Shown here: positions 9,603 to 64,000 of the stretch, in pieces | Layout of the letters: each line of letters opens with the position of its first letter | Position numbering within the stretch: the first letter of the stretch is position 1 | Assembly (NCBI RefSeq): GCF_902713615.1 | Contig: NC_052158.1 | Location: 43,735,159-43,799,158 of the forward strand | DNA length: 64,000 nt | Reading direction: 5' to 3' | Origin: Scyliorhinus canicula | Lineage: Eukaryota | The notes under the pieces: generated by a model | Told to the model about the DNA's origin: nothing | Database searches by the model: none | Seen by the model: the letters and a program-made list of their open reading frames with translations, nothing else | Translations under genes and position numbers: made by a program

Positions 9603-10690
9603 GCGGGGGGGGGGAGGGGTAAAGAAAGGGGAATCGCAGGGTAAGGAGGGCGGATGGAGGAGGTGAAGGAAGAGATGAGGTGTGAAGGAGGGATGGGATG
9701 AAGGAGAGAAGGGAGTGAGCAAGGGGGTTTGGTGGGTGAGGAAAGAGTGCATGGGGATAAAGGAGGCAAAAGGAGGAGTGAAGGGTTGAGTCGATGGCAG
9801 CATGAGGGAGGGAGTTGGGGTGAGAAAAAGGGGATGGGGTGAGGGAAAGGGTGAGGGGGATGAATGATGGAATGTGTGGGAATGGGGGTGAGTGAGGGGA
9901 TATAGGGGTGAGAGTGGATATGGGGGTGAGTGAGGGGATATGGGGAAGGTATGGGCATGTGAGGGGGTGAAGGAGGATGGGGTGGGTGAGGGGATGAGGG
10001 TGAGCGGAGAGGGGTGGGGGCTGAGGGGAGGTAAGTGAGGCAAGATGGGGTGTGAGGGAGATGAGCTGTGAGGGAGGGGGAAATGGGGGTGGGTTGTGAG
10101 TGAGGGGAGATGGGGGTGTAGAGGGAATGGGGGTGTGAGGGAGGGAATGGGGGTGTGAGGGGGTTGAGTTGTGAATGATGGGGATGTGAGGGAGGGAATG
10201 GGGGTGTGAGGGAGGGAATGGGGGTGTGAGGGAGGGAATGGGATGTGAGGGAGGGAATGGGGGTGTGAGGGAGGGAATGAGGGTGTGAGAGGGATGAGTT
10301 GAGTGAGGGGAGATGGGGGTGTGAGGGAGGGAATGGGGGTGTGAGGGAGTTGAGTTGTGAATGAGGGGAGATGGGGGTGTAGGGGGAATGTGGGTGTGAG
10401 GGGGGGAATGAGGGGGTTGAGTTGTGAATGAGGGGAGATGGGGGTGTAGGGGGAATGTGGGTGTGAGGGAGGGAATGAGGGTGTGCGAGGGATGAGTTGA
10501 GAGTGAGGGGGAGATGGGGGTGTAGGGGAATGTGGGTGTGAGGGAGGGAATGAGGGTGTGCGAGGGATGAGTTGAGAGTGAGGGGGAGATGGGGGTGTAG
10601 GGGAATGTGGGTGTGAGGGAGGGAATGAGGGTGTGAGAGGGATGAGTTGAGAGTGAGGAGGAGATGGGGTGAGTTTAGGGGGATAGAGGT
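9603..10690 (+). repeat. G/A-rich low-complexity, minisatellite-like tract
   Basis: The plus strand is nearly C-free, with (gagggagggaatgggggtgt)n units and higher-order units of about 75 bp at 10430-10670. Confidence 0.9.
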
Positions 10691-10699
10691 TGAGCAGAT

Positions 10700-11010
10700 T
10701 TAACGGCCGCGATCCTGGCCCCGCCCCCCGGAGCGATTTGGAACCCCGAACGCTGGGCGGAGAACTACAACTCCCATCAGGCACCGCAGGCTGACTCTCA
10801 CGGCTCTCACTGCTCCTCACGGCCACATGCAGCATGGGTAATCGCGCTCTGGCGGTCGGAGTCCACACCGACTGCGCAGAACCAGACTCGAATCTGCGAA
10901 CTATCAAAGCCCCGCCTTCTTATCCGGCGGGAATTCATTGTAGCTCTCTCCCTTGTTGGCTGCGAGAAACGTCAATCAGAGAACGGCGCTGTTTGATTGG
11001 CTGTGTGTTG
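10700..11010 (+). promoter_or_regulatory. CpG-rich promoter of ZNF-1 with ZNF143/Staf site, GC box, CRE-like and CCAAT elements
   Basis: ACTACAACTCCCATCAGGCACCGC at 10764-10787, GGCCCCGCCCCC at about 10718, acgtca at about 10969 and gattgg at about 10995. The motifs are conserved in paralogs. Confidence 0.75.
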
Positions 11011-11053
11011 GATATTGAGTGTTTTTTCGAAGCATTTCCCTTCTGATTTACAG

Positions 11054-11092
11054 GCTGAGTTTTGTTGATGGATCATTGCTGAATATGAGAAG
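11054..11092 (+). other. Probable 39-nt non-coding 5' exon of ZNF-1 (paralogs near 23863-23901 -, 46735-46773 - and 59868-59902 +)
   Basis: tttacag| acceptor and AAG|GTGAGG donor, conserved across paralogs. Confidence 0.6.
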
Positions 11093-11379
11093 GTGAGGTG
11101 TAATTATCTGGGAGCGGCAGAGACACATTTATTGGAACATCTTTCAATGTCTTCTTTAAAGATTTTACATAAAGGCTTCGGTGTTTCTCAAAAGCCTGGG
11201 CTTGGATTTGTTAGTTTTGCCCAGTGCTGTGTGTATGAGAGCTAAATTTGGGATGTGCAGTCTGAGTGAGTGCAATGTACCTAATTTCCCAGGATAAACC
11301 AGAACCCTTCAATCAGTTACACTGAATCAATATTTCTTTCGCTTCCAGCACTTCCTGCCCAGTGTGCTCAAATAATTTT

Positions 11380-15701: not shown

Positions 15702-15935
15702 TGCGTGGGTTTCCTCCGGGTGCTCCGGTTTCCTCCCACAGTCCAAAGATGTGCGGGTTAGGTGGATTGGCCATGCTAAATTGTCCGTAGTGTCCTAAAA
15801 AGTAAGGTTCGGGGGGGGGGGTTGTTGGGTTACGGGTATAGGGTGGATACGTGGGTTTGAGTAGGGTGATCATTGCTCGGCACAACATTGAGGGCCGAAG
15901 GGCCTGTTCTGTGCTGTACTGTTCTATGTTCTATG
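15702..15935 (+). mobile_element. HE1 SINE, 5'-truncated
   Basis: V-domain plus tail gagggccgaagggcctgttctgtgctgtactgttctatgttctatg. Confidence 0.9.
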
Positions 15936-17329
15936 CTCTACTGGTCAAACATGAGCAATGAGATTAAGGACCACATCAGTCAGTGCAGAGCTTGTAATGA
16001 ACATCAAGTTAAGCAAGATAAAGAACTGATCTTGACTTATGACATCCCAGACAGGCCATGGATGGAGCTTGGAGTGGACCTCTTCACGCTCACTGGAACT
16101 GATCATCTCGTCAGTCGACTACTATTCAGACTACTCGGAGTTAACAATAGGATTGTAGAACTCTTGAAAGCACACTTAAGTTGTCCTTGCATTCCTGACA
16201 TTGTGATGATTGACAATGGCGCTCAATTCATGGGTGAAGAATGATTGGAAAATTCAGCACCACACATCATCTCCATACTTTCCCCAGTCAAATGGAAAGG
16301 CCAAGGCAGCAGTGAAAAGTGTCAGAGATCAAAAACTGACTACATCCAGCACAGATGTGTTATCCAGCACAGATGTGTAAGAGGCAATGTTGGAGAAACA
16401 CACCTACTGATGGAATGAAAAGTTGCCCAGTTCAGTTACTAATGTCACACTGCACCCAGACTGCTCTTCCAACATCTAAAAAACACTACTGAGGCCAATA
16501 GTAACATGAGTGAGAGTGACAAGATCAAAGTGAAATGACAGAAAGATAAATTTCACTTTGATAAAGCTGCTTTATCGTTGCCAGAGCTGAGAGTTGGAGA
16601 GTGGTCAGAGTAAAAACATTCAACAGTCAACAAAAGTCAGCTCACTGGGCAACTTGAGACCCGAGTAGAAAGTTGTCACCTCGATTGTACACGGTGAAAG
16701 TGAACAACTAGATCTATCGTCACAACCACAGACATCTGTGTACAACTGGAGAAGCTACTCCTTCACAACTGACAGCTGATGAGGCAGATCTGATTTCATC
16801 AACTAAACAAGAAAATGAATGACCATCAGTCCCAGAGGTCAACCGGTCCCCATCAAATGCAACAGATCAGCAGCGACAATTACCACAGCAACAACACTCA
16901 TCTAGGCAACAATGTTCCCGATAGAGACGTCACCTCAGGAACCAGCAGACATGAATAAACAGCCAACAACAACTCACACACGTCCCATAAGACCTTAACA
17001 CGTTAGAAGATTCTGTGAACAATGTGTGTGTAGGTAGAAAGTAAATTGGAACAGATAGAAAGAACAGTTTTGTTTTCATCTGTGATTAATTTCTTTCTGG
17101 ACTATGTATGTGGAGCAATTTGTAAATGATAATACGTGATTTTCTTTAGGAACAGCTTGATATTTGGATTAATTCCTTTGTACACTGTGGTCCAATATTA
17201 ATGTGACCTCAGATGGCATCATACATAAATAAAGGTTTAAGACAGTAACCATTTGACATGCCACATAGAATACTGTTCAAATTAAAATTGCTCCAAATAT
17301 TTCTGGAATAATGTGAGTTTCCTTCAGCT

Positions 17330-20135: not shown

Positions 20136-20339
20136 CATCTATGAATAAGCAGCAGCTTCCATACATATTGATGTCTTTTAGTGATCTGGTCAAAGGTTAA
20201 ATTGACCTTGAACCGATTAGACTGATGGTGGGAGAGGTTGGAAACAGACACTGCTGAGACAGACAGTGCTTTGAAAGGGCAGCTCCCCTGTGTGAGCACT
20301 GGAGGGTAAACAACACAGACAACTCTCAGTGTAAGGGAA

Positions 20340-21791
20340 GCACGTGAGCCAGCTCCAAATCAGTATGGAGATGTTGGTGTTTGGTGAGAGAGGAGTAGGT
20401 GAAACAACCCTGGCACACGTCACACTGGAAGGGTTCACTGATGTTCCAGGAGGTCTGATAACTTAAGACTTGATCACAGAACTCACACTGATAGGGTTTC
20501 TTCCCTGCTTGTGTGTTGGAGGAGCAGGAGATGCACCGTTTCTGTGAAAGCCTTCTCACACACCTCACACCTGAATGTATTTTACTCAGTGCAGATCCAC
20601 TGCTTCAGGAGGATGTCTCAAAAGCTTTATTCCAAACCTCACACTTTTGTGAATCTTCTGATGGAGCAAGAGTTTTGATGACTGTGAGAATGATTTGTCA
20701 CACACCTCACACCTGAATGGTTTCTCGCCTGTGTGAATGCGTTGGAGTACACAGAGGCTTGATGATACTGAGAATGATTTGTGACATACCTTGCAGGTGA
20801 ATGGCTTTTCCCCAGTGTGAATGCGTCGGTGTGCACGGAGGTTCGATGGCTGCGAGATTGATTTGTCGCTCTTCACACTTGAATGGCTTCTGCCCATGTG
20901 AATGCGTTGGTGCGCACAAAGTTTTGATGACTGCAAGAATGATTTGTCACACACCTTGCACACAAATGTTTTTTCTCCAGTGTGAATGCGACTGTGCAGC
21001 AAGAGTTTGGAGGAGTGGGTGAAAGCTTTCTCACAGATCTCACATCTGAAGGGTTTCTCCCCTGTGTGAATCCTCTGGTGTATCACAAGCCTTGTAGATA
21101 TTGCAAAAGCTTTATCACAATCCTCACACTTGTAGGGCTTCTCCCTTGTATGAATTGTCTGGTGGCGCAGAAGTCTTGATGACTGCGAGAATGATTTGTC
21201 ACACATTTCACAAATGAAGGGTTTCTCCCGTGTGAATGCATTGATGAACACGGAGACTCGATGATGACGAGAAAGATTTGTCACACACCACACGCGTGAA
21301 TGATTACTCACCTGTGTGAATGCATTGGTGTACGCGCAGCACACATATGTTGAGAAAGTTTTGTCGCATACATCACAAGAAAATGGTTTTTCCCCTGTGT
21401 GAAGGTGTTGGTGTACACGGAGATACGATGACATTGACCATATTCTCGCATATGGTTTCTCCCCTGTGTGAATGCGCTGGTGCATATGGAGATTCGAAGA
21501 CTGGGAAAATGATTTGTTACACACCTCACAAGGGCTGCTCCCTTGTGTGGATACGCCCATGAATGACCAGTGCCGATGACTGCGCGAACCCCTTGTTACA
21601 CACATCATACTTGAATGGCTTCCTCCCTGTGTGAGTGCGATGGTGTGCAAGGAGGGTCGATGACTGCGAGAATTATTTGTCATACACCTCACATGTGAAT
21701 GGTTTCTCCCCACTGTGAATGTGTCTGTGATTCACGATGGCCGTGTGAAGGCACGGTCGCAAACCTCACACGTGAATAGTTTCTCTTCCAT
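20340..21791 (-). pseudogene. ZNF-2: C2H2 zinc-finger pseudogene
   Basis: Paralogous ATG at 21791 (MEEKLFTCEVCDRAFTRPS*) is followed by an early TGA and several frameshifts. Finger motifs switch frame along ORF 20586..21713. Confidence 0.88.
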
Positions 21792-23834: not shown

Positions 23835-24933
23835 TCTGCCCCTCCCAGATAATTACACCTCACCTTCTCATATTCAGCAATGACCCATCAACAAAACTCA
23901 GTCTGTAAATCAGAAGGGAAATGCTTCCAATAAACACCCTCAATATCCAACACACAGCCAATCCAACAGTTCAGCACAAAGCACCGAGTAAACAGGTCTG
24001 TGAGCTGGATCTTCTCGCACAGCATAAGGGGCATTTCCACAGCTGATTGCCCACAGGATAGTCAGACTGCCTGAACATTAGTGTGGATATTGTGCAATGT
24101 AATGATTGTAAATTCTGTTCCTTCACTCACCATCTCCTGACTTGGTTTTGAGTCCCTACAGGAAGTGAAGCAGCTGTGGTAGAGGAAGAGGAGAGAATGG
24201 GCAGAGCGGGTGGGCTCTCTGATTGACGTCTCTCACAACCAATGAACACCAAAGGCATGAAAAACCCTACATTCCAATTTCCGAACGCCGGGTGCAAACT
24301 GCCACTACGCGCGGCAGAACTACAACTCCCATCAGGCACTGCGGGGAAGCTCGCCTTCTGATTCCATACAGTTGCTCCTCACTGCGCAGACCCCGGGCCC
24401 ACATGCAGCATGGATAATGTCGTTCTGAATGGGTGAGAATGTTTCCCTGTGCAGATCCGGGTGGAGACGTCAGTTAGAGGAGCCCTGGTTGGTTCACTCT
24501 AATTTATTTCTTTGATGCAGGTTTTTTCATGCCTTTGGTGTTCATTGTCTGTGAGAGACGTCAATCAGAGAGCCCACCCACTCTGCCCATTCTCTCCTCT
24601 TCCTCTACCACAGCTGCTTCACTTCCTGTAGGGACTCAAAACCAAGTCAGGAGATGGTGAGTGAAGGAGCACAATTTACAATCATTACATTGCACAATAT
24701 CCACACTAATGTTCAGGCAGTCTGACTATCCTGTGGGCAATCAGCTGTGGAAATGCCCCTTATGCTGTGTGAGAAGATCCAGCTCACAGACCTGTTTACT
24801 CGGTGCTTTGTGCTGAGCTGTTTGATTGGCTGTGTGTTGGATATTGAGGGTGTTTATTGGGAGCATTTCCCTTCTGTTGATGGATCATTACTGAATACGA
24901 TAAGGTGAGATTTTATTATCTGGGAGGGGCAGA
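23835..24933. repeat. Inverted repeat (arms 23835-24266 and 24520-24933) forming the 5' ends of ZNF-2 and ZNF-3
   Basis: The arms are near-identical reverse complements separated by a spacer of about 253 bp. Confidence 0.93.
24267..24519. promoter_or_regulatory. Bidirectional promoter core with ZNF143/Staf site
   Basis: ACTACAACTCCCATCAGGCACTGC at 24319-24342, CpG-rich, flanked by divergent ZNF genes. Confidence 0.75.
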
Positions 24934-25200
24934 GCCACATTTATTGAAATGTCTTTTAATATCTTCTTTAAAGATTTTACCCGAAGGCCTCGGCCTTTCT
25001 GGGGTACATCCCATCAAGCCCTGGGAACTTACCTATCTTAATGTTTTCCAAGACACCCAATACCTCCTCATTTTTGATCTCAATGTCACACAGACTATCT
25101 TCACACCTTTCCCCAGACTTATCCTCCACCAAGTCCTTCTCATTGGTGAATACTGATGCAAAGTACTGATTCAGTACCTCACCCATTTCCTCTGGTTCCA

Positions 25201-30769: not shown

Positions 30770-30965
30770 TATGAACTTGGAGCCGGCTCAGCTGCTTTCT
30801 TTGCACTGAGAGCTGTCTGTGTTGTTTACCCTCCAGTGCTCACACAGGAGAGCTGTCCTTCCAAAGCACTGTCTGTCTCAGTATCTGTCTCCAACCTTTC
30901 CCACCATCAGTCCAATCATTTCAAGAAGGTCAAATTAACTTTGTTTGACCAGATCATCAAAAGAA
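30770..30965 (+). repeat. Conserved 3' element shared by ZNF-2, -3, -4 and -5
   Basis: tgtctgtgttgtttacc.ccagtgctcacacagg.gagctg..aaagcactgtctgtctcag..ttgaccagat also occurs at 20170-20370 (-), 62270-62460 (+), and split between 42620-42680 and 39090-39240 (-). Confidence 0.85.
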
Positions 30966-31214: not shown

Positions 31215-32320
31215 ACTTTTAAAAAAATATATTTTATTCCAAACCTTACAGAAAGTTTCACATTCGTTAAAGCAAACTGAAATACAAACAGTTTGTCATT
31301 TTTCATCTTTTACAAATTAAACTCTTCCCCCCCCCAAAAACCCCTCTCCCTCTCTACTCGCTGGCGACAAACAAATCTTTGCAAACAGAGACTAACGGCC
31401 TGCATCTCAAGTAGAACTGCTCCTCTGACCCCCTAAGGCCAAACTTGATTTTCACCATTTGCCGAAATTCTGTCCACATCCCCCAACCACACTGACGCGC
31501 TCGGTGGCACCGCCGACCTCCAACCCAGTAGGATCTGTCGCCAGGCAATCAGAGAGGCGAAGGCCACGACATTGGCCCCTTCCTCACCAGCAACTCCAAT
31601 ATATCAAAGATTGCCACCACCCTCACCCCTACAATCTTTGACAATGTCTCAAAACCCTCCAAATTTCAGGCAGGGCCAAAACATATGCACATGATTCGCC
31701 GGTCCTCCTTCACACCCCTTACACTTATTCTCCACCTCCAGGAAGAACCAGCTCAAGCGTGTACGAGTCATATGTGCCCCGTGAACCACTTTAAATTGTA
31801 TCAGGCTCATCCTATATGTCTATACACGCTGGTGCAAACCTATGATTTCTCCAAATTGGTGACTGTATCGACGTGCCCCCCAACTCAAAGTGCCGCCTAA
31901 ACTGGTTTGAAATCTTAAGGGATGCCACCACCACTGGACTCGTCGTATACCTGTCCGGAGAGAACGGGAGGGGGGCTGTTACCATCGTCTTTGAACATGC
32001 CCCCCCACCCCAACCTTCACGGCCGCACCTTTTCCACATTCACCGCCCAGTAATAATGTAATAAATCCTCTTTGCTGCTGTCCCCTCTGCAGGAAGGCTC
32101 TCCAGATCCTGGGTGTCTTACCTGCCCACACAAAGGCCAAAATTAACCTATCCACCTTCACAAATAATCCTTTGAGGAGGAAGATCGGGAAGGATTGAAA
32201 CATGAACAGAAACTTCAGAAATTGAATTATCATTTTTATGGGCTGCACTCTCCCCGCCAAGGAGAGCGGGAGAACATCCCATCTCTTCAGGTCCCTTCTC
32301 ACCCCGACCACCAAGCTAAC
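31215..32320 (-). mobile_element. L1-clade LINE 3' fragment
   Basis: DLKRWDVLPLSLAGRVQ..; VTAPLPFSPDRYTTSPVVVASLKI. Same family as 54705-58007. Confidence 0.85.
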
Positions 32321-33169
32321 CAAGTTCTATTTGTGCATTGTGGCTCAATTATGACGTGTTTGCTGGAGGTTGAAGAGGATGACACTGACCAATTGTTATT
32401 GGAGATGAGAGGAGGGAGGGAAATTGAGAGGAATTTAATGAAAGCAGAAACTGAAGTCATTCCTCGATCTGCCAACTAGTTTTGAAATTTTCAGTTAACC
32501 CAGAACATCAACAGATTTTTGTGGGGAGAGAGTTCCAGATTTCCAGTCCCCTTTTTGTGAAGAAGTGTTTGCTGACATCACTCCCAAACAGCCGAGCTCT
32601 GATTTTAATATGTTCCCTTTCTCTGGACTCTCCCACCAAAGGAATAGTTTATTTCTAACTACTCTATCAACTTGTTTAACCATCTTAAACACCTCAATTA
32701 AATTACCCATTGAATTTCCATGTGACCAGTGGATCTCAGTAACCTTTGGTGGGTTTGTGGATGGAAACGAGCTCCATCCTGTGCCATTAAAGTTTGGTGT
32801 CATTTCTGACCATCGGAATTGCGAACCAGACTAGAGCAGAGGGATTTTAAAGAAACTTTTGTCTGTAGTATTCTGATAAGAGTTTCCCCTGATGTGAGTA
32901 TGTGTGTTAGTAAAGTGAGCCAGCTCTCAGGAGTGGGTATGGGGTAGAATCGGATCCTGCTTTAGTTGGTGATGTGAATTATAGAAAGATCCTCTTCAGG
33001 TGACGGGTGTTTGACTAATATCATGGGTAATGTTGTACTGTCCTGTCTGGGAAGACTACTATCCTGAGTATGGTAAGGGAACGGGGCTGGAGTCTCTTCC
33101 GACCCGAGTTCCCTCAGCCCATTATACCTCGATGTAATATCGGTGTGATATGTTCACCGTACAACCAAC

Positions 33170-35184: not shown

Positions 35185-35900
35185 TATTTGGAGTAATTTG
35201 AATTTTAAACAATGTTCCAAGTGGTGTGTAAAATGGTTTCTGCCTCAAAATCGTGTATTTACATATGATGACATCAGACATCACATTAATATGGGATCCA
35301 CAGTGTACAGTGGGATTTATCAAAACATCCCCCCTTTTTGTTTACAATTTATTCTACATAAATCTATAAAGTAAATGATCACACTTGAACAAAAAAAATC
35401 TTTGTTCTTTCCAGCGTAGAATTGTGTCTGTCCCTGCACACACTGCACGTATAATCTTTAAAGTGTTCATGTCTTCACTCCAAATGATACCTCTGCAAAT
35501 GAAGTAACATCCTTTGTTAACACTTTGGAGTAGATAGAAGCGGTTTGAGAAAGATGCTTTGAAGTGGCTTATGGTTGGACTCTACCATAACTTTCTCTCT
35601 CCCAAACAGGTTCTGGTTGAAATGCTGACGAGCAAAGTAAATATCCAGGCACTCTTTCTCAATCTGTTGTTACGCCCCTCTGGATTAGTGCGTGGTCAAT
35701 TCCAGCCCCACTTGACCCAGAGTCTCAACACAATTAACAAATAATTCTTAGAAAATATCCTAAGTCTTTGCTCTATGGATGTCTAATAAATAGTCATTAG
35801 GTTTGTAAATTTAAAACATTTTTTTATTTATAACAATAATTATAGTTAAATTTGCAGTAAATACAATACTCAGCACTGTACAGTTACTGAAGCAAGGTCC
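35185..35900 (-). mobile_element. Internally deleted paralog of the 14380-17300 Gypsy remnant (short LTR, PPT, RNase H piece), with another LTR fragment inserted
   Basis: The reverse complement of 35460-35650 matches 15083-15290. Minus-strand PPT AAAAAGGGGGA at about 35330-35340. Confidence 0.75.
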
Positions 35901-36578
35901 AATTTTGTGCTACGGTTTTTTGTGTGTTTCAACTGTGAAAATGATCTGACATTTCCAATGGAACATCTGGATCACTTGAGTGTTTCCTCTCCCTGCTCTG
36001 TTCACTCTTGGCTCTTATCCATGAAGGAGACTAAGTATGTTCCACATGGAATGGTCAGATACATCAAAGGTTGGTTCAATTCTGTAGATGAATCATGCAG
36101 TATATTCTCATCATCAGAATCAGCAAAAACTTCTGCAAGTTCCTGGTCTGACAGGTGGGTTCAGTCAGATCCATGAGGTCAGAGTGCACTTCAAGAGACG
36201 AGACGCTGCTGATTGGTTGCCTTCTCTCTATTATCTAATTCCTAACCACCCTCTAACTCGCCCCACCCTGTATATACACACATACACACACAAGATAGAC
36301 ATCGGAGGTTTCAGTCACCTCTCACCCAAAACCACACAAGTGGAGGCAACTGCTGATTTCTATGGACAGGTGCCTCTGTGAAAAGCGCGCATTCCAACTT
36401 GACCCCAGGTACATGGGAGGTGCTGTGAATGCGAGGCAGGACGTCTAGATTCAGGCTTCTTCCACCATTGTCATCAAAACGGAGAGGCTCCTTGTCGTGG
36501 CAAAAATCCAGACTGTGAAAACAGAAAAATATCCCTCATGATAAAAAAAGTGGGCTTAATGAGGTTGAGGAGATAGTG

Positions 36579-37884
36579 TTATAGGGAAGGAACCCTAATT
36601 CCTTCCGTGCCTCCCCCATCCCCGTAATGTGACCTCTCCTGTGCCAAAGGCATGTCCAGCAGTTGATGTCTCTGCACTGGGCCGCTGCTGGCCAGAGGTG
36701 CAGGTACTACAATCTGAGACAGAATCTGCCTCATTTCATTCAAAGTTTCATTGCTTCTTTGCAGTAGCTGACAAAGAACCTCATTCTGCTGCTGAAGAAT
36801 CTCATTGTTTCTTTGCAGATTCTGGCTAACCTCCATCTTAAATTCACTCAAGGTTTGGAGAAGCAAGTTAGAAGTGACCAGATAACTCTCTGTACTTTGA
36901 ACCTGTTCCTGATGTAAGCGCTCAAGGGGTTTCAAATCATTTTCATTTTCTTCATCCGCAGCATGGGCCTGTGTTGTCCATGTGCTTGTGGAGATGGTGG
37001 AGATTCTGCTCCCAAAGCCGCAGGTTCCTCGTCTACGGGAGGTTCTGAGTGCTCTTGCTCCACCACAGCAGCCGGAGCATCACAGACCTCCTCCTTGTTT
37101 CTTTGTAGATGTTGTTGAAGAATATCATTGTTTCTTTGCAGATTCTGTCTAACCTCCACCTTAATTTCAGTCAAAGTTTCCTGAAGCAAGTTAGAAGTGA
37201 CCTGACAACTCTCTGTACTTTGAACCTGTTCCTGATGTAAGTGCTCATGGTGCTTCAGATTATCTTCATTTTCTTCATCAGCAGCGTGGGCCTGATGTTG
37301 TCCACGTGCTTGTGAAGACAGTGGAGCTTCTGCTCCCAGAGCCATAGGTTCCTCACCTCCGGAAGGTTCTGAGCGCCCTCCTTCCACCACAGTAGCCAGG
37401 TCATCACAGGCCTCCTCCTTCACACAAACCATATTTAATTTTAACCCACCAACACTACCCTCCAAATCAGACATCTTACCCTCCTGACACTTCTCTCCCT
37501 CCTCCACTGCAGCTGCCATGCCACATTGCTGTGAGGTATTCACCTCCGTCCCTTCCTCATCAGCCCTTTCAGGAATCTCGGACGCTGCTGCCAACTCTCC
37601 TCCATCACCAGCTGATGTGTCCATGGGTAGCTGTGTATCTTTCAGAGGAAGAAAATCACAATTATTATCATTTGTCACATAAATTAACTCTCCTCCTGAT
37701 GGTTTAATCACTCAGCTGCTAACATCACCTTCACTCATCCCATATCTGATCCACCATTGGTTATCGTGGAGTTGGAGAGATCAAACAGCTTCCTCGTGAA
37801 CTCCTCCTGTTCCGTCAGCTCCTTCATGTACGGAACCTGCCCTCCGGTCGACGAGCACTCCTGGGTATTATGGGCCAGCTTTAG
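36579..37884 (-). pseudogene. Disabled paralog of the 62636-63739 exon (Harbinger Myb/SANT-partner tail)
   Basis: Acceptor ttcctttag| then LKLAHNTQECSSTGGQVPYMKELTEQEEFTRKLF. It has a 1-nt deletion at about 37740, an in-frame TGA at about 37713, an internal module duplication and a further frameshift at about 36965. Confidence 0.85.
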
Positions 37885-38122
37885 CTAAAGGAAGAATGAA
37901 AATTAAAAAGAAATCATGGTCCAGACTTTGCTGTGCTGTCTTGTGACACATTTTCAGCCTGCACCCATGGGGAATTCTGATTAGAATTTAATCTTATGAC
38001 AAAGTCAGAGCCATCTCCAAGACAATTTCATTTTACAAAACCTCATAAAATCTGTAAATAAATCTTGTGATCTTTCTGTATTTTCAACTCAAAAATAGGA
38101 CATAAAGTTCAAAAATTAACAC

Positions 38123-39080: not shown

Positions 39081-39244
39081 TAAGCAGCAGCTTCTATACA
39101 TTTGGATGTCTGGTTTTGGTGATGTTTGGCTATCTGGTCCAAGGTAAATTTACTTTTTTGAAACAATGGACTGATGGTGGAGAGCTTGGAGACAGCCACT
39201 GCTGAGACAGTCAGTGCCTTGGAAGGTCAGCTCCCCTGGTGACA

Positions 39245-46440: not shown

Positions 46441-46819
46441 AATTTACCGAAATTCCTCCCCTTATCTGAATAAATCAAGCTGGGAAATCAAGTGCTGGAA
46501 GCCAAGGAAAATATTTCTTCAGAGTAGCTGATTGTTTATCCTGGGAAATTAGACACACTGCACTCACTCAGACTGCACATCCCACATTCAGCTCTCAGGC
46601 ACAGCACTGGGCTAAACTATCAAATCCAAGCCCAGGCTTTTGAGAAAGGCCGAGGCCTTCAGGTAAAATCTGTGAAGACAATAAAAGACTTTTCAATAAA
46701 TGTGTCTCTGCCCCTCCCAGATAATTACACCTCACCTTCTGATATTCAGCAATGACCCATCAACAAAACTCAGCCTGTAAATCAGAAAGGAAATGCTTCC
46801 AAGAAACACCCTCAATATC

Positions 46820-47200
46820 CAACACACAGCCAATCAAACAGCTCAACTCTCTGAGTGACGTCTGTCACAGCCACTCAAAGGCCAGCAATCCCTCCCTGCA
46901 GCCAATCACACAGAAGGGGGAAGCCTCCGGCCAGTTCTGCGCAACCGCTTTCCAGACAGACTCTCAACCGCTTAGATCCACATTACGCATACTGCTTATG
47001 GCCCGGAGCCTGCGCAGTGAGGAGGGGCATTCTGGAATCAGGGGACAAGCCAGCCCGCAATGTCTGATGGGGGTTGCTGTTCTGCAGCGCGCCTGATGGG
47101 AGTTGTAGTTCTGGGAGTCTGCCGTGCGCAGAAGCGGTTGGCGCCCAGCGTTCGGGAGTTGGAATGTGAGGAAGCGCGAGCCCGAGCGGCTGAATCGATT
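46820..47200 (-). promoter_or_regulatory. Promoter of ZNF-4 with ZNF143/Staf site and a degenerate tandem copy
   Basis: The reverse complement of 47086-47109 is ACTACAACTCCCATCAGGCGCGCT. A second copy ACAGCAACCCCCATCAGACATTGC lies at about 47057-47080, with CCAAT and CRE-like motifs downstream. Confidence 0.72.
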
Positions 47201-59217: not shown

Positions 59218-59500
59218 CTACTGATGTTGTCAGTTTGAAAGCCTCCGAGGATGAAGAATGCTGTTCCCACACTAGAAATCTCTGTCAAACGTTTACCAAT
59301 GGCATTGAGACAGCAGCTGCAATGGATTTTCACAGTAACTTCATTGCAGTGTTAATGTAAGCCTAATTGTCACACTAATAAAGATTATTATTATGAAGTG
59401 AGGTTTCATTCAGATGGGACAATGACAAGTTTAAATCCCCACCTGATCTGCTGCTCAAAGTCACCTCCGTTTCCCCGGTCAGTTTCACAACCTTCAGGAA
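59218..59500 (+). repeat. Cluster-specific dispersed repeat, copy 3 (interrupted by a ~70-bp retroposon tail at 59323-59394)
   Basis: Matches 34970-35180. Confidence 0.85.
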
Positions 59501-59526
59501 ACTCCTGTTACTGCAGAAATATTTGG

Positions 59527-59935
59527 ATTGTCTGTGAGAGACGTCAATCAGAGAGCCCACCCACTCCGCCCATTCTCTCCTCTTCCTCTACCACAGCTGC
59601 TTCACTTCCTGTAGGGACTCAAAACCAAGTCAGGAGATGGTGAGTGAAGGAGCACAATTTACAATCATTACATTGCACAATATCCACACTAATGTTCAGG
59701 CAGTCTGACTATCCTGTGGGCAATCAGCTGTGGAAATACCCCTTATGCTGTGTGAGAAGATCCAGCTCACAGACCTGTTTACTCGGTGCTTTGTGCTGAG
59801 CTGTTTGATTGGCTGTGTGTTGGATATTGAGGGTGTTTATTGGGAACATTTCCCTTCTGATTTACAGGCTGTTTTGTTGATGGGTCATTGCTGAATATCA
59901 GAAGTGAGGTGTAATTATCTGGGAGGGGCAGAGAA
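59527..59935 (+). other. 5' exon cassette of ZNF-5, a third near-identical copy of the 23835-24933 palindrome arm
   Basis: Direct match. It contains ATG|GTGAGT at 59637-59645. Confidence 0.85.
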
Positions 59936-60179
59936 ACATTTATTGAAATGTCTTTTAATGTCTTCTTTAAAGATTTTACCTGAAAGCCTCGGCCTTTCCC
60001 AGAAGCCTGGGTTTGGATTTGCTAGTTTAGCCCAGTGCTGTGTCTGAGAGTTGAATTTGGGTGTGCAGTGTGAATCTGTGCAGTGCATCTAATTTTCCAA
60101 GATAAATCAGTACCCTTCAATCAGCTATGCTGAAGAAATAGTTTCCTCAGCTTCCAGGACTTCCTGCCCAGTGTGTTTT

Positions 60180-60517
60180 CATAGCATTTACAGTGCAGAA
60201 GGAGGCCATTCAGCCCATCGAGTCTGCACCGGCTCTTGGGAAAGAGCACCCTACCCAAGCCCACACATCCACCCTATCCCCATAACCCAGTAACCCCACT
60301 CAACACTAAGGGCAATTTTGGACACTAAGGGCAATTTAGCATGGCCAATCCACCAAACCTGCACATCTATGGACTGTGGGAGGAAACCGGAGGAAACCCA
60401 CGTACACACGGGGAGAACGTGCAGACTCCGCACAGACAGTGACCCAAGCCGGGAATCGAAGCTGGGACCCTGGAGTTGTGAAGCAATTGTGCTAACTACT
60501 ATGCTACCGTGCTGCCC
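60180..60517 (-). mobile_element. HE1 SINE
   Basis: Head, V-domain and CR1 tail. Confidence 0.9.
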
Positions 60518-61410
60518 AAATAATTTTGGAAAACAATGGGATAAATTTCAAAATCTCCATTGAATTAACATTTCTCCTCTGTGTTTTTAGATTAAACACA
60601 AAGGACCCGAGCTCACAGTGAATTGATAGCCGTTTTGCACTCTGCCCGACTGTCTTTTCCATTGTCCTCCTGCTGTCTGGGAAGTAGGGGTGTGGGTGGG
60701 GGAAAGAAAGTAGCCATATTGTCTGCTGCTGGTCACTAATCAGTGTCCCTGCTGGAAGCAGAGGGTGTGTGACAGTCAAGAAAGGAAAAAGAAAGGACTT
60801 TTAGCTGATCCCCCACAGAGGGGGATAACAGACTGACATAGCAGACTGGCACTCACAGTGGACATAGCAGGCTGGCACTCACAGTGGAACAGTCTCTAAC
60901 TGAAGAGTCAGCCCCTTCAGCAAATGAGGAGAGGGAGTTAGAGGAAATCATATTTCCTTTTCCTGTTTTACAGAATGATTGCACCGTACTACACCAGAGA
61001 ATACAGAGAGGATAGACACCGCAGATAGATCCTGATTATCTACCAAGGAACAACTGCACAACTGTGGGAAGACATCCAGTCCCTTCACAGTATTGCTCAA
61101 CACTGAGAAGCTTGGCAGTGAAACCATCATCTGGAAATTGGTTGGATAAGAGGAGCTTTGACAACAGATCTGAAACTGGTCAATGGTATTAAACCTTCCA
61201 TCAGAACCAACCTTTCCGAAGGTTCGGCTCTGGATGATCGGTCAGGGTGAGACTGGGAAGAAGTGTGAGTGGGCTCCAAGTGTTGTCAAACTCATGAACC
61301 ACTGACTCGTTCCTGTAGGTGAGAGGCTTTTCAAGTATGAGGATGAGTGCACAGATTCAGAAGATCTAAGGACCATCTGTTAAAACTACTGTTGCCACAA
61401 GGGCAGCCAC

Positions 61411-61926
61411 ATGGAACTGAAACAATTCAGGTGTGATGTTTGTGATGAAGATTTTGTGACGTCTACGATTCTCCTGAGGCACCAGATGATTCACACAGGG
61501 GATAAACCATTCAAGTGTGATGTATGTGACAAATCATTCTCACGTCCATCCAACCTCTACATACACCAACGCATTCACACAGGGGAGAAACCATTCACAT
61601 GCGAAGTGTGTGATAAATCATTCTCGCAGTCATCGAGTCTCCGCAGTCACCAACGCACTCACACAGGGGAGAAACCATTCACATGTGAGGTGTGTGACAT
61701 ATCATTCTCACTGTCATCGAACCTCCGTAAACACCAACGCACTCACACGGGGGAGAAACCATTCACATGCGAGGTGTGTGACAAATCATTCTCACGGTCA
61801 TCGAACCTCCGGCAACACCGACGCATTCACACGGAGAAACCGTTCCCATGCAAGGTATGTGATAAATTATTCTTGGACTCATTGGCTTCTTGCGTACACC
61901 AACATATTCATATGTACAGTATGTGA
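61411..61926 (+). CDS. ZNF-5: C2H2 zinc-finger protein, 5 canonical fingers plus one atypical finger; possibly the 5' coding exon of a longer spliced gene
   Basis: ATG in the paralogous position, intact fingers, acceptor at 60973/60974, candidate phase-0 donor AAG|GTATGT at 61854/61855. Confidence 0.82.
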   Translation: MELKQFRCDVCDEDFVTSTILLRHQMIHTGDKPFKCDVCDKSFSRPSNLYIHQRIHTGEKPFTCEVCDKSFSQSSSLRSHQRTHTGEKPFTCEVCDISFSLSSNLRKHQRTHTGEKPFTCEVCDKSFSRSSNLRQHRRIHTEKPFPCKVCDKLFLDSLASCVHQHIHMYSM

Positions 61927-62635
61927 CAAATCACTCCCTGAGTCATCCTCCCTATGCACACAGCAGCACATCACACCGGAAACAAACCATTGACATGTAT
62001 ACATAGAAACATAAATAGAAAATAAAAGCAGGAGGAGGCCATTCAGCCCTTCGTGCTGCTCAACCATTCATTATGATCATGGCTGATCATCAAGTTCAAT
62101 ACCCTGATCTCCCCCTCCCCCCAGCCATGTGCCTTGATCATTGTCAGACCAATCAGCTCTCTGCACACGCTGGTAAGAAATCATTCATGTTGACGTGAGC
62201 GACAAATTCTCACGGTCATCAGACCTCCGCAGACACTAGCATACTCACACTGAGGATCACCTTCCCTTACGCTGAGATTTGTCTGTGTTGTTTACCCCCC
62301 AGTGCTCACACAGGGGAGCTGTTCTTCCAAAGCACTGTCTGTCTCAGCAGTGTCTGTCTCCAAAAACTCCCACATCAGTCCAATCATTTCAAGAAGGTCA
62401 ATTTAACCTTTTGACCAGATCTCCGAACATCATCAAAAGAAGACATCAGTGTGTGTAGAAGTTTCTGCACCAGTTTCACCTCAAATGGACAAGATTGCTC
62501 TGACTTTGTCTCTCTAAGCAGAAGACCCCCTGGGTGCAGGCTGAAAGCTGTCTCCAGAACTCAGAAAATATGTCCCAAGACAGCACAGCAAAGTCTGGAC
62601 TATGATTCATTTTCTATTTTAATTACTTCCTTTAG

Positions 62636-63739
62636 GTAAAGCTGACCCAAAGCGCCCAGGAGCGTTCATTGACTGGAGGGCGGGTTCCGTACATCAAGGA
62701 GCTGACGGAACAGGAGGAGTTCACGAGGAAGCTGTTTGATCTCTCCAACTCCACGATAGCCAATGGTGGATCAGATATGGGGATGAGCAAAGGTGATGTC
62801 AGCAGCGGAGTGTTTAAACCATCAGGAGGAGAGTTAGTTTATATGACAAAAGATGATAATTGTGATTTTCTTCCTCTGACAGATACACGAGTGTCCATGG
62901 ACACATCAAATGGTGATGGAGGAGAGTTGGCAGCAGCGACCGAGATTCCTGAAAGGGCTGATGAGGAAGGGACTGTGGTGAATACCTCACAGCGACGTGG
63001 CATGGCAGCTGCAGTGGAGGAGGGAGAGAAGTGTCAGGAGGGTAAGATGTCTGATTTGGAGGGTAGTGTTGGTGGGTTAAAATTAAATATGGTTTGTGTG
63101 AAGGAGGAGGCCTGTGATGACCTGGCTACTGTGGTGGAAGGAGGGCGCTCAGAACCTTCTGGAGGTGAGGAACCTATGGCTCTGGGAGCAGAAGCTCCAC
63201 TGTCTTCACAAGCACGTGGACAACATCAGGCCCATGCTGCTGATGAAGAAAATGAAGATAATCTGAAGCACCATGAGCACTTACATCAGGAACAGGTTCA
63301 AAGTACAGAGAGTTGTCAGGTCACTTCTAACTTGCTTCAGGAAACTTTGACTGAAATTAAGGTGGAGGTTAGACAGAATCTGCAAAGAAACAATGATATT
63401 CTTCAACAACATCTACAAAGAAACAATGAGATTCTTCAGCATCATCTACAAAGAAACAATGAGATTCTTCAACATCTACAAAGAAACAATGAGATTCTTC
63501 AGCAGCTCTTTGTTAGCTTCTGCAATGAAACTTTGAATGAAATTAGGCAGATCCTATCTCAGATTGTAGTGCCTGCACCTTCTGGCCAACAGCAGCCCAG
63601 TGCCGAGACATCTACTGCTGGACATGCCTCTGACACAGGAGAGGTCACGTCATGGGTCAGGGGAGACGTGGAAGATATTAGGCTGCCTCCCTCCAACACT
63701 GCCTCCTCAACACCATTATCTCTCCCCCCCAAGGGATAA
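62636..63739 (+). CDS. Terminal coding exon (367 aa) resembling the post-Myb part of a Harbinger Myb/SANT-like partner protein: KL.....E...TGG....K.LT..EE motif, acidic linker, coiled coil
   Basis: Acceptor ttacttcctttag| in phase 0 and an open frame to TAA at 63739. The paralog at 37884 reads KLAHN..TGG.VP.MKELTEQEE, typical of the end of Harbinger/NAIF1/MSANTD-type domains. Confidence 0.72.
   Translation, partial: VKLTQSAQERSLTGGRVPYIKELTEQEEFTRKLFDLSNSTIANGGSDMGMSKGDVSSGVFKPSGGELVYMTKDDNCDFLPLTDTRVSMDTSNGDGGELAAATEIPERADEEGTVVNTSQRRGMAAAVEEGEKCQEGKMSDLEGSVGGLKLNMVCVKEEACDDLATVVEGGRSEPSGGEEPMALGAEAPLSSQARGQHQAHAADEENEDNLKHHEHLHQEQVQSTESCQVTSNLLQETLTEIKVEVRQNLQRNNDILQQHLQRNNEILQHHLQRNNEILQHLQRNNEILQQLFVSFCNETLNEIRQILSQIVVPAPSGQQQPSAETSTAGHASDTGEVTSWVRGDVEDIRLPPSNTASSTPLSLPPKG
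63380..63508 (+). repeat. Coding tandem repeat, 4 units of 33/33/30/33 bp (LQRNNEILQHH)
   Basis: Direct inspection. Confidence 0.92.
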
Positions 63740-64000
63740 TTTTCTGTCTGGATATTTGCATGATGGAGAGCCTCTCCATCATCATGACAATGATGGACAA
63801 AGCCCGAATCCATGAGTCCTATTCCCCTGATCACAGCACCTCCCATTTTCATGGGATCAGGAATGGGCCGGGCCGAGATTTACACATTTCACAGAGGCAG
63901 CTGCCCATAGGAATGACCTGTGTGGGAGGTCTCTAAAAACCAAAGTGCACAAATTAGGTCTTAACTCCATTGATTTTTTTGGATAGATAGAGGAAAGATA

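What the first reader, a model, noticed from the sequence alone, without database searches (positions are those of the whole stretch)
61411..63739. Candidate zinc-finger/Harbinger chimeric gene: a C2H2 array in place of the Myb DNA-binding exon
Seen: 710 bp after the ZNF-5 stop there is a strong phase-0 acceptor (62635/62636) opening an intact 367-codon frame. A phase-0 donor AAG|GTATGT lies right after finger 5 (61854/61855). Splicing gives a 515-aa protein (148+367) with five canonical fingers, an acidic linker with two psi-K-x-E SUMO consensus sites (VKEE, IKVE) and a coiled coil. Fingers downstream of the donor are atypical or decayed. Known: PIF/Harbinger elements encode a Myb/SANT-like protein whose domain ends in a K(L/I)AHN..E...TGGG.P....LT..EE motif and whose C-terminus binds the transposase. 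Inference: the Myb exon has been replaced by a rapidly evolving zinc-finger array, giving a KRAB-independent effector or a retargeted transposase adaptor. I know of no description of this in cartilaginous fish.
Basis: partly seen in the sequence, partly recalled or inferred. Interest (0 to 1): 0.9.

Follow-up and report, generated by a model that had tools for sequence, protein, structure and literature searches.

The report
Shark zinc-finger gene with Myb-partner tail
This is a real, expressed catshark gene in which five DNA-binding zinc fingers are spliced onto the tail of a Myb/SANT-like (transposon-partner type) protein that has lost its own DNA-binding exon, and it belongs to a shark gene family of dozens of members that I found in no paper.

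Summary
Joining 61411-61854, 62636-62792 and 62883-63739 reproduces, residue for residue, the 485-aa RefSeq model "zinc finger protein 43-like isoform X1" of Scyliorhinus canicula.

The tail corresponds to exon 2 onward of Myb_DNA-bind_5 genes. A stand-alone catshark Myb+tail gene has its intron at the same position. Basking shark, white shark and bamboo shark models read fingers, then a Myb exon, then the tail. In catsharks and Mustelus the Myb exon is gone.

In the S. torazame ortholog the finger exon (dN/dS 0.13) and the tail's ~100-residue helix (dN/dS 0.03) are strongly conserved. The acidic linker evolves neutrally.

The Myb domain of relatives folds most like NAIF1, MYPOP, TSNARE1 and MSANTD4, which the literature treats as Harbinger-derived. 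I found no transposase or terminal inverted repeats at any locus examined, so the Harbinger link is by family only.

The fingers are not evolving fast in this gene. The tail's function is untested; a coiled-coil pairing or partner-binding module is my inference. The same scan noted similar genes elsewhere on this chromosome.

The parts
59396..60180 (+). Conserved 5' block (likely promoter, first non-coding exon ending ATG|GTGAGT at 59628-59636, and start of intron 1) shared by the whole zinc-finger family
   Evidence: It is 87-92% identical to the regions upstream of the finger exons in S. canicula L002, Mustelus L003 and Cetorhinus L001. Partial copies lie upstream of all five finger genes in the window. 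Its role as a promoter is inferred, not shown.
61411..61854 (+). Coding part of the finger exon: ATG, five canonical C2H2 fingers, then a truncated sixth finger cut after its first Cys by the donor AAG|GTATGT
   Evidence: The S. torazame ortholog is 98.6% identical, with dN/dS 0.13.
61855..62635 (+). 781-nt intron. It holds the read-through end of the finger ORF (to 61926), decayed fingers, AATAAA at 62021, a SINE piece at about 62010-62110, a conserved post-array element at 62261-62461, and the last 144 nt (62492-62635), which match the Myb-tail intron of Cetorhinus
   Evidence: The joint is seen in RNA. Homology to L001 starts at 62492, and no trace of a Myb exon is present. The post-array element recurs after other arrays.
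62636..62792 (+). Tail exon A (52 codons plus 1 nt): remnant of the C-terminal extension of the Myb/SANT-like domain (end of helix 3, GG loop, LT..EE helix)
   Evidence: The intron position matches that of stand-alone P0202 (R83|A84) and of Cetorhinus. AlphaFold2 folds this stretch together with the Myb core in P0017 at pLDDT 78-91. Motif conservation is shown.
62793..62882 (+). 90-nt GT..AG intron, phase 1, in frame if retained (30 extra residues)
   Evidence: It is removed in contigs of all four RNA runs and in one raw read. It contains a stop in Mustelus and Cetorhinus and is retained in the RefSeq model of paralog P0003.
62883..63739 (+). Tail exon B: acidic disordered region, long helix, Gln/Pro-rich end, stop codon
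   Evidence: The ortholog has only in-frame indels up to the last few codons.
63257..63565 (+). About 103-residue predicted single helix (candidate coiled coil), the constrained core of the tail
   Evidence: AlphaFold2 pLDDT 88-98. dN/dS 0.03, with 1 non-synonymous against 7 synonymous changes versus S. torazame.
63378..63501 (+). 33-nt tandem repeat, 3.9 copies (11-residue units LQRNNEILQQH) inside the helix; copy number differs between paralogs
36400..37955 (-). Second, damaged tail copy downstream of the finger array at 42.6-43.4 kb (-): frameshift at the end of exon A, internal partial duplication, truncated frame
   Evidence: RefSeq LOC119976221 (P0020, P0076).

Best explanation
This is a functional two-part transcription-factor gene of the small-spotted catshark.

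Shown:
- Transcription from the + strand produces an mRNA in which a donor lying inside the sixth finger (C-K|V-C) is spliced to the ancestral exon-2 acceptor of a Myb_DNA-bind_5 gene.
- The product has five C2H2 fingers joined to a 337-aa tail. The tail holds a short remnant of the Myb domain's C-terminal extension, a roughly 125-aa acidic disordered stretch, a roughly 100-aa helix and a short end.
- The Myb exon is absent here but present in the gene models of lamniform and orectolobiform sharks.
- Dozens of paralogs with the same junction exist in catsharks and Mustelus.
- The fingers and the helix are under strong purifying selection, while the acidic stretch is not.

Inferred:
- A Myb+tail gene of the Harbinger Myb-like type (NAIF1/MYPOP-like) came to lie downstream of a finger gene in an early galeomorph shark and was captured by splicing.
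- The Myb exon was later lost in the carcharhiniform lineage, and the unit was multiplied by tandem duplication.
- The fingers now provide DNA targeting. The helix acts as a coiled-coil module that pairs the protein with itself, with paralogs or with a partner, much as SCAN or BTB domains do for other finger proteins. The acidic stretch is a loosely constrained regulatory linker.
For: - Exact identity of the spliced CDS to RefSeq P0001.
- The junction and the mini-intron appear in RNA of four studies. The unspliced stretch 61909-62009 has about zero depth, against junction contig depths of 6-34.
- The S. torazame ortholog is colinear over 4.3 kb. Non-coding identity is 94.2% and finger-exon identity 98.6%. 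dN/dS is 0.13 for the fingers, 0.03 for the helix and about 1.4 for the acidic part.
- The junction HTGEKPFxC(K/E)|VKLxHN recurs in about 35 proteins of three species.
- Exon layout in Cetorhinus is finger exon, Myb exon, then tail, with the donor at the same place in the finger.
- Chiloscyllium P0213 and Carcharodon P0061 have the same architecture.
- Stand-alone P0202 has the same intron position and a tail homologous along its whole length.
- The tail tree puts all finger-linked tails in one clade with 100% support.
- AlphaFold2 models the tail as a long confident helix with the rest disordered.
- The Myb model matches NAIF1, MYPOP, TSNARE1 and MSANTD4 best.
- PMC9392472 treats these as Harbinger Myb-like derivatives.
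Against: - No experiment shows DNA binding, pairing or any regulatory effect.
- Pairwise dN/dS of the whole tail across paralogs and species is only 0.55-0.78.
- This copy has lost two features that are conserved elsewhere. One is the Asn of AHN, invariant in the 17-sequence alignment, which is TQS here. The other is the basic RGRGRRRKN-type C-terminus, lost through a frame change shared with S. torazame.
- Coverage by raw reads is low.
- The lamniform and orectolobiform finger+Myb+tail forms are automatic gene models that I could not check against RNA.
- Resolution inside the tail tree is poor (25 of 47 inner branches are open), so the order of Myb loss and family expansion is not settled.
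Confidence: 0.75

Rival explanations
1. Retargeted transposase adaptor. The tail keeps the surface by which a Harbinger Myb-like protein holds its DDE transposase (or the domesticated HARBI1), so the fingers would bring a nuclease or transposase to new DNA sites.
For: The tail comes from the protein family whose members bind and import the Harbinger transposase; NAIF1 binds HARBI1 (PMC9392472). The most constrained part is a protein-interaction-type helix. The language-model neighbours of the tail alone are mostly Myb_DNA-bind_5 clusters (scores 0.77-0.82, a lead only).
Against: No DDE_Tnp_4-like ORF was found next to any tail locus examined, and no TIRs. The paper I read says only that the Myb-like protein contacts the transposase's N-terminal end. 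It does not say which part of the Myb-like protein does so. The tail has no detectable sequence relatives outside elasmobranchs.
Confidence: 0.1
2. The tail donor was an ordinary, long-established host Myb/SANT gene (MYPOP-like) and has nothing to do with a Harbinger element, so the 'Harbinger' label is misleading.
For: Stand-alone Myb+tail genes are low-copy and have introns. Related ones occur from rays to sharks (Pristis, Narcine, Heterodontus, Pristiophorus, Scyliorhinus) and lack transposon hallmarks. Automatic names of the nearest non-elasmobranch relatives are 'MYPOP-like'.
Against: The best structural matches (NAIF1, MYPOP, TSNARE1, MSANTD4) are all listed as established or putative Harbinger Myb-like derivatives in PMC9392472. 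Even a host-gene donor would then trace back to Harbinger. First-stage notes report Myb-only Harbinger-like elements elsewhere in this genome, but these are unchecked.
Confidence: 0.25
3. Splicing noise. The finger gene reads through into a decaying Myb-gene remnant, and the fusion protein has no function.
For: Whole-tail dN/dS between paralogs is high (0.55-0.78). The neighbouring copy at 36.4-37.9 kb is visibly broken. This copy has lost the basic C-terminus.
Against: The helix has dN/dS 0.03 (1 non-synonymous, 7 synonymous; binomial P of about 7e-5 under neutrality). The frame is intact in both Scyliorhinus species, with only in-frame indels. The junction is conserved in about 35 proteins of three species. 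The spliced form dominates over read-through in RNA contigs.
Confidence: 0.05

Closest known systems
Harbinger Myb-like protein derivatives: NAIF1, MYPOP (p42POP), MSANTD4, TSNARE1 (Pfam Myb_DNA-bind_5, PF13873)
   Same: The tail is homologous to the part after the Myb exon of shark PF13873 proteins and has the same intron position. The Myb domain of those relatives matches NAIF1 (E 4e-5), MYPOP (4e-5), TSNARE1 and MSANTD4 best by fold. The ancestral layout (Myb domain, acidic middle, C-terminal helix, basic end) resembles what I recall of MYPOP (own knowledge).
   Different: This gene has no Myb/SANT domain at all; C2H2 fingers take its place. The tail itself has no detectable sequence relatives outside elasmobranchs.
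ZSCAN20, PRDM11 and TSNARE1: host genes listed as putative fusions with a Harbinger Myb-like domain (PMC9392472)
   Same: They are fusions between a host gene and a Harbinger Myb-like gene. PRDM11-type and syntaxin/TSNARE1-type clusters carrying PF13873 appear among the structural neighbours of P0202.
   Different: Those fusions keep the Myb DNA-binding domain (PF13873 in the clusters). Here the Myb domain was discarded and only the partner's tail was kept.
Lineage-specific C2H2 subfamilies defined by an accessory domain (KRAB-ZNF, SCAN-ZNF, BTB-ZNF; FiNZ in cyprinid fish)
   Same: It is a clustered, tandemly duplicated family of finger genes sharing one non-finger module and a common promoter block. 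The module is a likely interaction domain.
   Different: The module is C-terminal, is joined through a donor inside a finger, and has no similarity to KRAB, SCAN or BTB. No link to transposon repression is shown.
Host-transposase fusion genes formed by splicing capture (Cosby et al., bioRxiv 10.1101/2020.05.07.082677)
   Same: The birth mechanism is the same: exons of a neighbouring transposon-type gene are captured through splice sites.
   Different: That survey covered tetrapods and transposase domains, mostly DNA-binding domains fused to host KRAB. Here the host supplies the DNA-binding domain. The captured part is the non-DNA-binding tail of the transposase's partner protein, and the lineage is sharks.

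Membership tests
C2H2 zinc-finger proteins | Tandem C-x2-C-x12-H-x3-H fingers with TGEKP-type linkers | tested here: met
   There are five fingers. zf-C2H2 scores E 3e-35 and zf-H2C2_2 scores E 1e-52.
Myb_DNA-bind_5 / Harbinger Myb-like protein family | Trihelix Myb/SANT-like DNA-binding domain (PF13873) | tested here: not met
   Neither the tail nor the full protein P0001 gives a PF13873 hit. No Myb exon is found anywhere in the window by tblastn, even at relaxed thresholds.
Myb_DNA-bind_5 / Harbinger Myb-like protein family | Homology of the remaining sequence to bona fide members, with shared gene structure | tested here: met
   P0017 and P0202 carry PF13873 (E 4e-13 and 1e-12) followed by a tail homologous to this one. 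The intron position is the same.
Myb_DNA-bind_5 / Harbinger Myb-like protein family | Post-domain motif AHN..E...GGG....LT..EE | tested here: inconclusive
   The motif is conserved across elasmobranch paralogs, with N88 and E109 invariant. This gene keeps GG and LTEQEE but has TQS in place of AHN.
PIF/Harbinger transposable element | DDE_Tnp_4 transposase gene beside the Myb-like gene | tested here: not met
   ORF lists of L004-L006 show no candidate transposase ORF; these were not run against Pfam. Pfam gives no transposase hit for ten + strand open stretches of window 31.5-36.4 kb; the - strand stretches were only inspected by eye.
PIF/Harbinger transposable element | Terminal inverted repeats and a 3-bp target duplication flanking the unit | tested here: not met
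   The only inverted repeats around P0202 (L004) are SINE copies, and only chance-size ones occur around the Cetorhinus Myb+tail unit. Old TIRs could have decayed.
KRAB-ZNF-like transposon-repressor families | KRAB (or another known co-repressor-recruiting) domain | tested here: not met
   Apart from finger families and chance-level finger-region matches (GAGA, BolA), Pfam finds no known accessory domain; the tail gives only sub-threshold hits (Use1 at E 0.005).
KRAB-ZNF-like transposon-repressor families | Binding to and silencing of transposons | not testable with these tools
   This needs ChIP-seq or CUT&RUN and reporter assays.
Host-transposon fusion genes formed by splicing capture | In-frame splicing of host exons to exons of a transposon-type gene, with selective constraint on the captured part | tested here: met
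   The junction is seen in RNA. Helix dN/dS is 0.03. The transposon origin of the captured gene is inferred from its family only.

The most novel reading that the evidence does not exclude
Galeomorph sharks, which lack KRAB zinc-finger genes (own knowledge), may have built an analogous system independently. It would be a large, clustered family of finger proteins whose shared coiled-coil tail, taken from a Harbinger transposase-partner protein, recruits a common effector to finger-specified targets such as transposons. Candidate effectors are the stand-alone Myb+tail protein, a HARBI1-type nuclease, or a chromatin complex.
Probability: 0.15. Interest if true: 0.8.

Novelty: new variant of a known kind. 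Interest (0 to 1): 0.6.

Why it matters
Zinc-finger gene families that expand in one lineage around a shared accessory domain (KRAB, SCAN, FiNZ) are a recurring theme in animal genome evolution. None has been described for cartilaginous fish in the papers I could search.

This family shows an unusual route. The host kept its own DNA-binding domain, took only the non-DNA-binding tail of a transposon-partner-type protein, and then discarded that protein's Myb domain. Apparent intermediate forms survive in other shark orders.

It offers a dated, stepwise example of domain exchange by splice-site capture. It also offers a constrained, roughly 100-residue helix whose binding partner can be looked for directly.

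Tried and rejected
- Pfam on the tail alone gave only sub-threshold hits (Use1 E 0.0035 and others), so no known domain.
- Rfam on 58-64 kb gave nothing.
- A word-indexed protein search with the Myb region reached only sharks. The exhaustive HMMER search was needed to reach stand-alone relatives.
- The TIR searches around the stand-alone gene (L004) and the Cetorhinus unit (L001) found only SINE pairs or chance-size repeats.
- Transposase search. ORF lists of L004-L006 and a Pfam scan of ten + strand open stretches between the convergent finger genes found none. This does not support the first-stage note s1-249212 that a Harbinger transposase gene lies there. The - strand pieces were only inspected by eye; they look like LINE or LTR fragments.
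- Four literature searches for sharks with zinc fingers, Harbinger or Myb found no description. Wells 2023, the whale-shark genome paper and Cosby 2020 do not mention it.
- My first dN/dS attempts were invalid because the 90-nt intron contains a stop in Mustelus and Cetorhinus and my script then picked the wrong intron length. I redid the analysis with spliced sequences.
- Raw-read runs X23 and X24 gave only about 1-5x coverage, so they add strand information and single junction reads only.
- I did not run a fold search of the tail model, because it is disordered outside one helix and matches would be meaningless.
Full report
**1. What is in the sequence**

The + strand ORF 61411-61926 encodes five canonical C2H2 fingers (61432-61830). 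A sixth finger starts with PFPCK. The codons AAG|GTA inside that finger's C-K-V-C knuckle form a consensus donor at 61854/61855.

A pyrimidine-rich acceptor at 62635/62636 opens a 367-codon frame that ends at 63739.

**2. The gene is expressed and spliced as predicted**

In assembled RNA contigs of four runs from four different studies, a 147-nt contig joins 61854 to 62636. It has 87 nt on the left without a mismatch and 60 nt on the right, with GT..AG ends. The same joint appears in a fifth run and in one raw read.

Raw oligo-dT reads over the gene all lie on the - strand, as expected for a + strand RNA in a standard stranded library. Contig depth over 61909-62009, just past the donor, is about zero, while the junction contigs have depth 6-34. 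Splicing therefore appears to be the main fate.

It is removed in all four runs.

Joining 61411-61854, 62636-62792 and 62883-63739 gives a 485-aa protein identical to P0001, the RefSeq "zinc finger protein 43-like isoform X1" of Scyliorhinus canicula. The window therefore comes from the small-spotted catshark, and the gene model already exists under an automatic name.

**3. A large family**

A search with the tail found 62 cluster representatives in S. canicula, S. torazame, Mustelus asterias, Cetorhinus maximus and Carcharodon carcharias. Most carry N-terminal fingers.

About 35 of these proteins show the same junction, HTGEKPFxC(K/E)|VKLxHN.QE. Paralogs in S. canicula (L002) and Mustelus (L003) have the same exon layout and no Myb exon.

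Earlier first-stage notes of this scan describe similar genes 1.3 to 4.3 Mb further along the same chromosome. These notes are unchecked leads.

**4. Where the tail comes from**

The basking-shark protein P0017 reads two fingers, then a complete Myb_DNA-bind_5 domain (PF13873, E 4e-13), then the tail. On its locus the finger exon (10001-10195) is followed 5.5 kb later by a Myb exon with its own ATG (15733-15999), and then by the tail (from 16325).

The basking-shark donor sits at the same place in a finger (C-E|V-C). White shark P0061 and bamboo shark P0213 have the same architecture, with clearly related fingers.

An exhaustive profile search also found stand-alone Myb+tail genes, including S. 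canicula LOC119952172 (P0202). Its tail is about 35% identical to the window's tail across the full-length alignment. Its Myb exon ends at R83, exactly where the window's acceptor lies.

DNA homology between the window and the basking-shark locus starts only 144 nt before the acceptor (62492). No trace of a Myb exon exists anywhere in the window.

In a tree of tails, all finger-linked tails form one clade with 100% support, apart from the stand-alone genes. S. canicula and S. torazame ortholog pairs are visible inside it.

The simplest history is as follows. A Myb+tail gene was captured by an upstream finger gene in an early galeomorph shark. The Myb exon was lost in the carcharhiniform lineage. 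The unit was then duplicated in tandem. The order of loss and expansion is not resolved, because 25 of the 47 inner branches of the tree are open.

**5. Is it "Harbinger"?**

The AlphaFold2 model of the Myb region plus exon A (pTM 0.67) matches NAIF1, MYPOP, TSNARE1 and MSANTD4 best among reviewed proteins. The language-model neighbours of P0202 are PF13873 clusters that include NAIF1.

PMC9392472 treats NAIF1 and MSANTD1-4 as domesticated Harbinger Myb-like genes. It lists MYPOP, ZSCAN20, PRDM11 and TSNARE1 as further candidates.

That is family-level support only. I found no DDE transposase ORF and no terminal inverted repeats at the stand-alone gene, at the basking-shark unit, or between the convergent finger genes of this window.

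The stand-alone genes have introns, and at most a few related ones turned up per species in sharks and rays. They look like host genes. Whether the immediate donor was an active element or an already domesticated gene remains open.

**6. Selection**

The S. torazame ortholog (L007, model P0033) is colinear with the window from 59735 to 63992. The table gives the values by region.

| Region | Identity | dN/dS | Note |
|---|---|---|---|
| Introns and flanks | 94.2% | not applicable | neutral reference |
| Finger exon | 98.6% | 0.13 | all five fingers identical in protein |
| Whole tail | 95.5-96.2% | 0.40 | heterogeneous |
| Exon A | 96.2% | 0.58 | few changes |
| Acidic stretch | not computed separately | about 1.4 | 14 non-synonymous, 3 synonymous |
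| Predicted helix | not computed separately | 0.03 | 1 non-synonymous, 7 synonymous; P about 7e-5 under neutrality |

The torazame frame is open, with only in-frame indels until the last few codons. Across paralogs and more distant species the whole-tail dN/dS is 0.55-0.78. The fusion is therefore maintained by selection, mainly on the fingers and on the helix. The fingers of this gene are not evolving fast.

**7. Anatomy of the tail**

AlphaFold2 with a 27-sequence alignment predicts disorder everywhere except one helix of about 103 residues (pLDDT 88-98, nt 63257-63565). This helix contains a 33-nt repeat present 3.9 times (11-residue units), whose copy number differs between paralogs.

In the Myb-containing relative, exon A folds with the Myb core as the end of helix 3, a GG loop and a fourth helix (pLDDT 78-91). 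In the fusion it is therefore an orphaned remnant.

This copy has replaced the family-invariant Asn of AHN. It has also lost the basic RGRGRRRKN-type C-terminus through a frame change shared with S. torazame. VKEE is conserved in the family (its Lys is present in at least 90% of sequences). IKVE is particular to this gene.

**8. Mechanism**

What is shown: the gene's structure, its splicing, its family, the source of the tail, and selective constraint.

What is inferred: the fingers target DNA, and the helix is a coiled-coil module for pairing or partner binding. The transposase-adaptor idea remains possible but has no support here. Splicing noise is disfavoured by the constraint data.

**9. 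Novelty**

I found no paper describing this family. The survey of host-transposase fusions covered tetrapods and transposase domains only.

The known fusions with Harbinger Myb-like genes keep the Myb domain; this one keeps only the tail. I rate it a new variant of a known kind. It is of clear interest to people who study zinc-finger family evolution and transposon domestication, but it is not a new principle.

Noticed in passing
window 59396-60180; also 10988-11366, 23835-24243 (-), 24544-24999, 46490-46845 (-): A roughly 785-bp block upstream of every finger gene in the window is 87-92% identical to the corresponding blocks in Mustelus and Cetorhinus. That is more conserved than the coding exons (about 75-78%) and the synonymous sites (dS about 0.28). 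It contains an exon-like piece ending exactly in ATG|GTGAGT at 59628-59636. RNA contigs cover 59464-59714, but I saw no splice from it.
   Followed up: partly
window 23835-24999: Two copies of the promoter block lie head to head (24243-23835 on - and 24544-24999 on +), 93-96% identical to the 59.5-kb copy. They sit between the divergent finger genes at 20.3-21.8 kb (-) and 29.2-30.9 kb (+). This is a likely bidirectional promoter.
   Followed up: no
window 36400-37955 (-): There is a second tail copy downstream of the finger array at 42.6-43.4 kb (-). It has a frameshift at the end of exon A, and an 867-bp stretch 94% identical to 62564-63430, which points to recent conversion or duplication. 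That stretch is joined mid-way to an older tail in another frame, giving the truncated RefSeq products P0020 and P0076.
   Followed up: partly
window 62261-62461; also 20183-20340 (-), 30795-30955, 39084-39242 (-): A 160-200-bp element follows the finger arrays of several genes in the window, including tail-less ones. It also occurs in Cetorhinus (L001 11690-11887, 85%) and Mustelus (L003 500-601, 94%). It may be the ancestral 3' UTR of the finger genes, now intronic in the chimera.
   Followed up: no
window 12.6-14.3 kb (+), 20.3-21.8 kb (-), 29.2-30.9 kb (+): Three of the five finger genes share the promoter block and 5' region with the chimera but have no tail exon downstream within the window. 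The tail-bearing genes are therefore a subfamily of a larger shark finger family.
   Followed up: no
window 60189-60516 and about 62010-62110: These are copies of a very abundant SINE-like repeat (core GGAGGCCATTCAGCCC...) with RNA word depths in the tens of thousands. The first is an insertion into intron 1 relative to paralogs and other species, but it is shared with S. torazame.
   Followed up: no
L007 (S. torazame scyTo_0015131, P0033): The deposited S. torazame protein model skips most of the finger exon (MELKQF joined to SLRSHQ) and is marked partial. The underlying DNA encodes all five fingers intact and an open tail. This is a gene-model error, not a gene defect.
   Followed up: yes
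window 31650-32330 (-) and 35520-35670 (-): Open stretches here look by eye like LINE reverse-transcriptase tail fragments and an LTR-retrotransposon RT/RNase H fragment. I did not run them against profiles.
   Followed up: no
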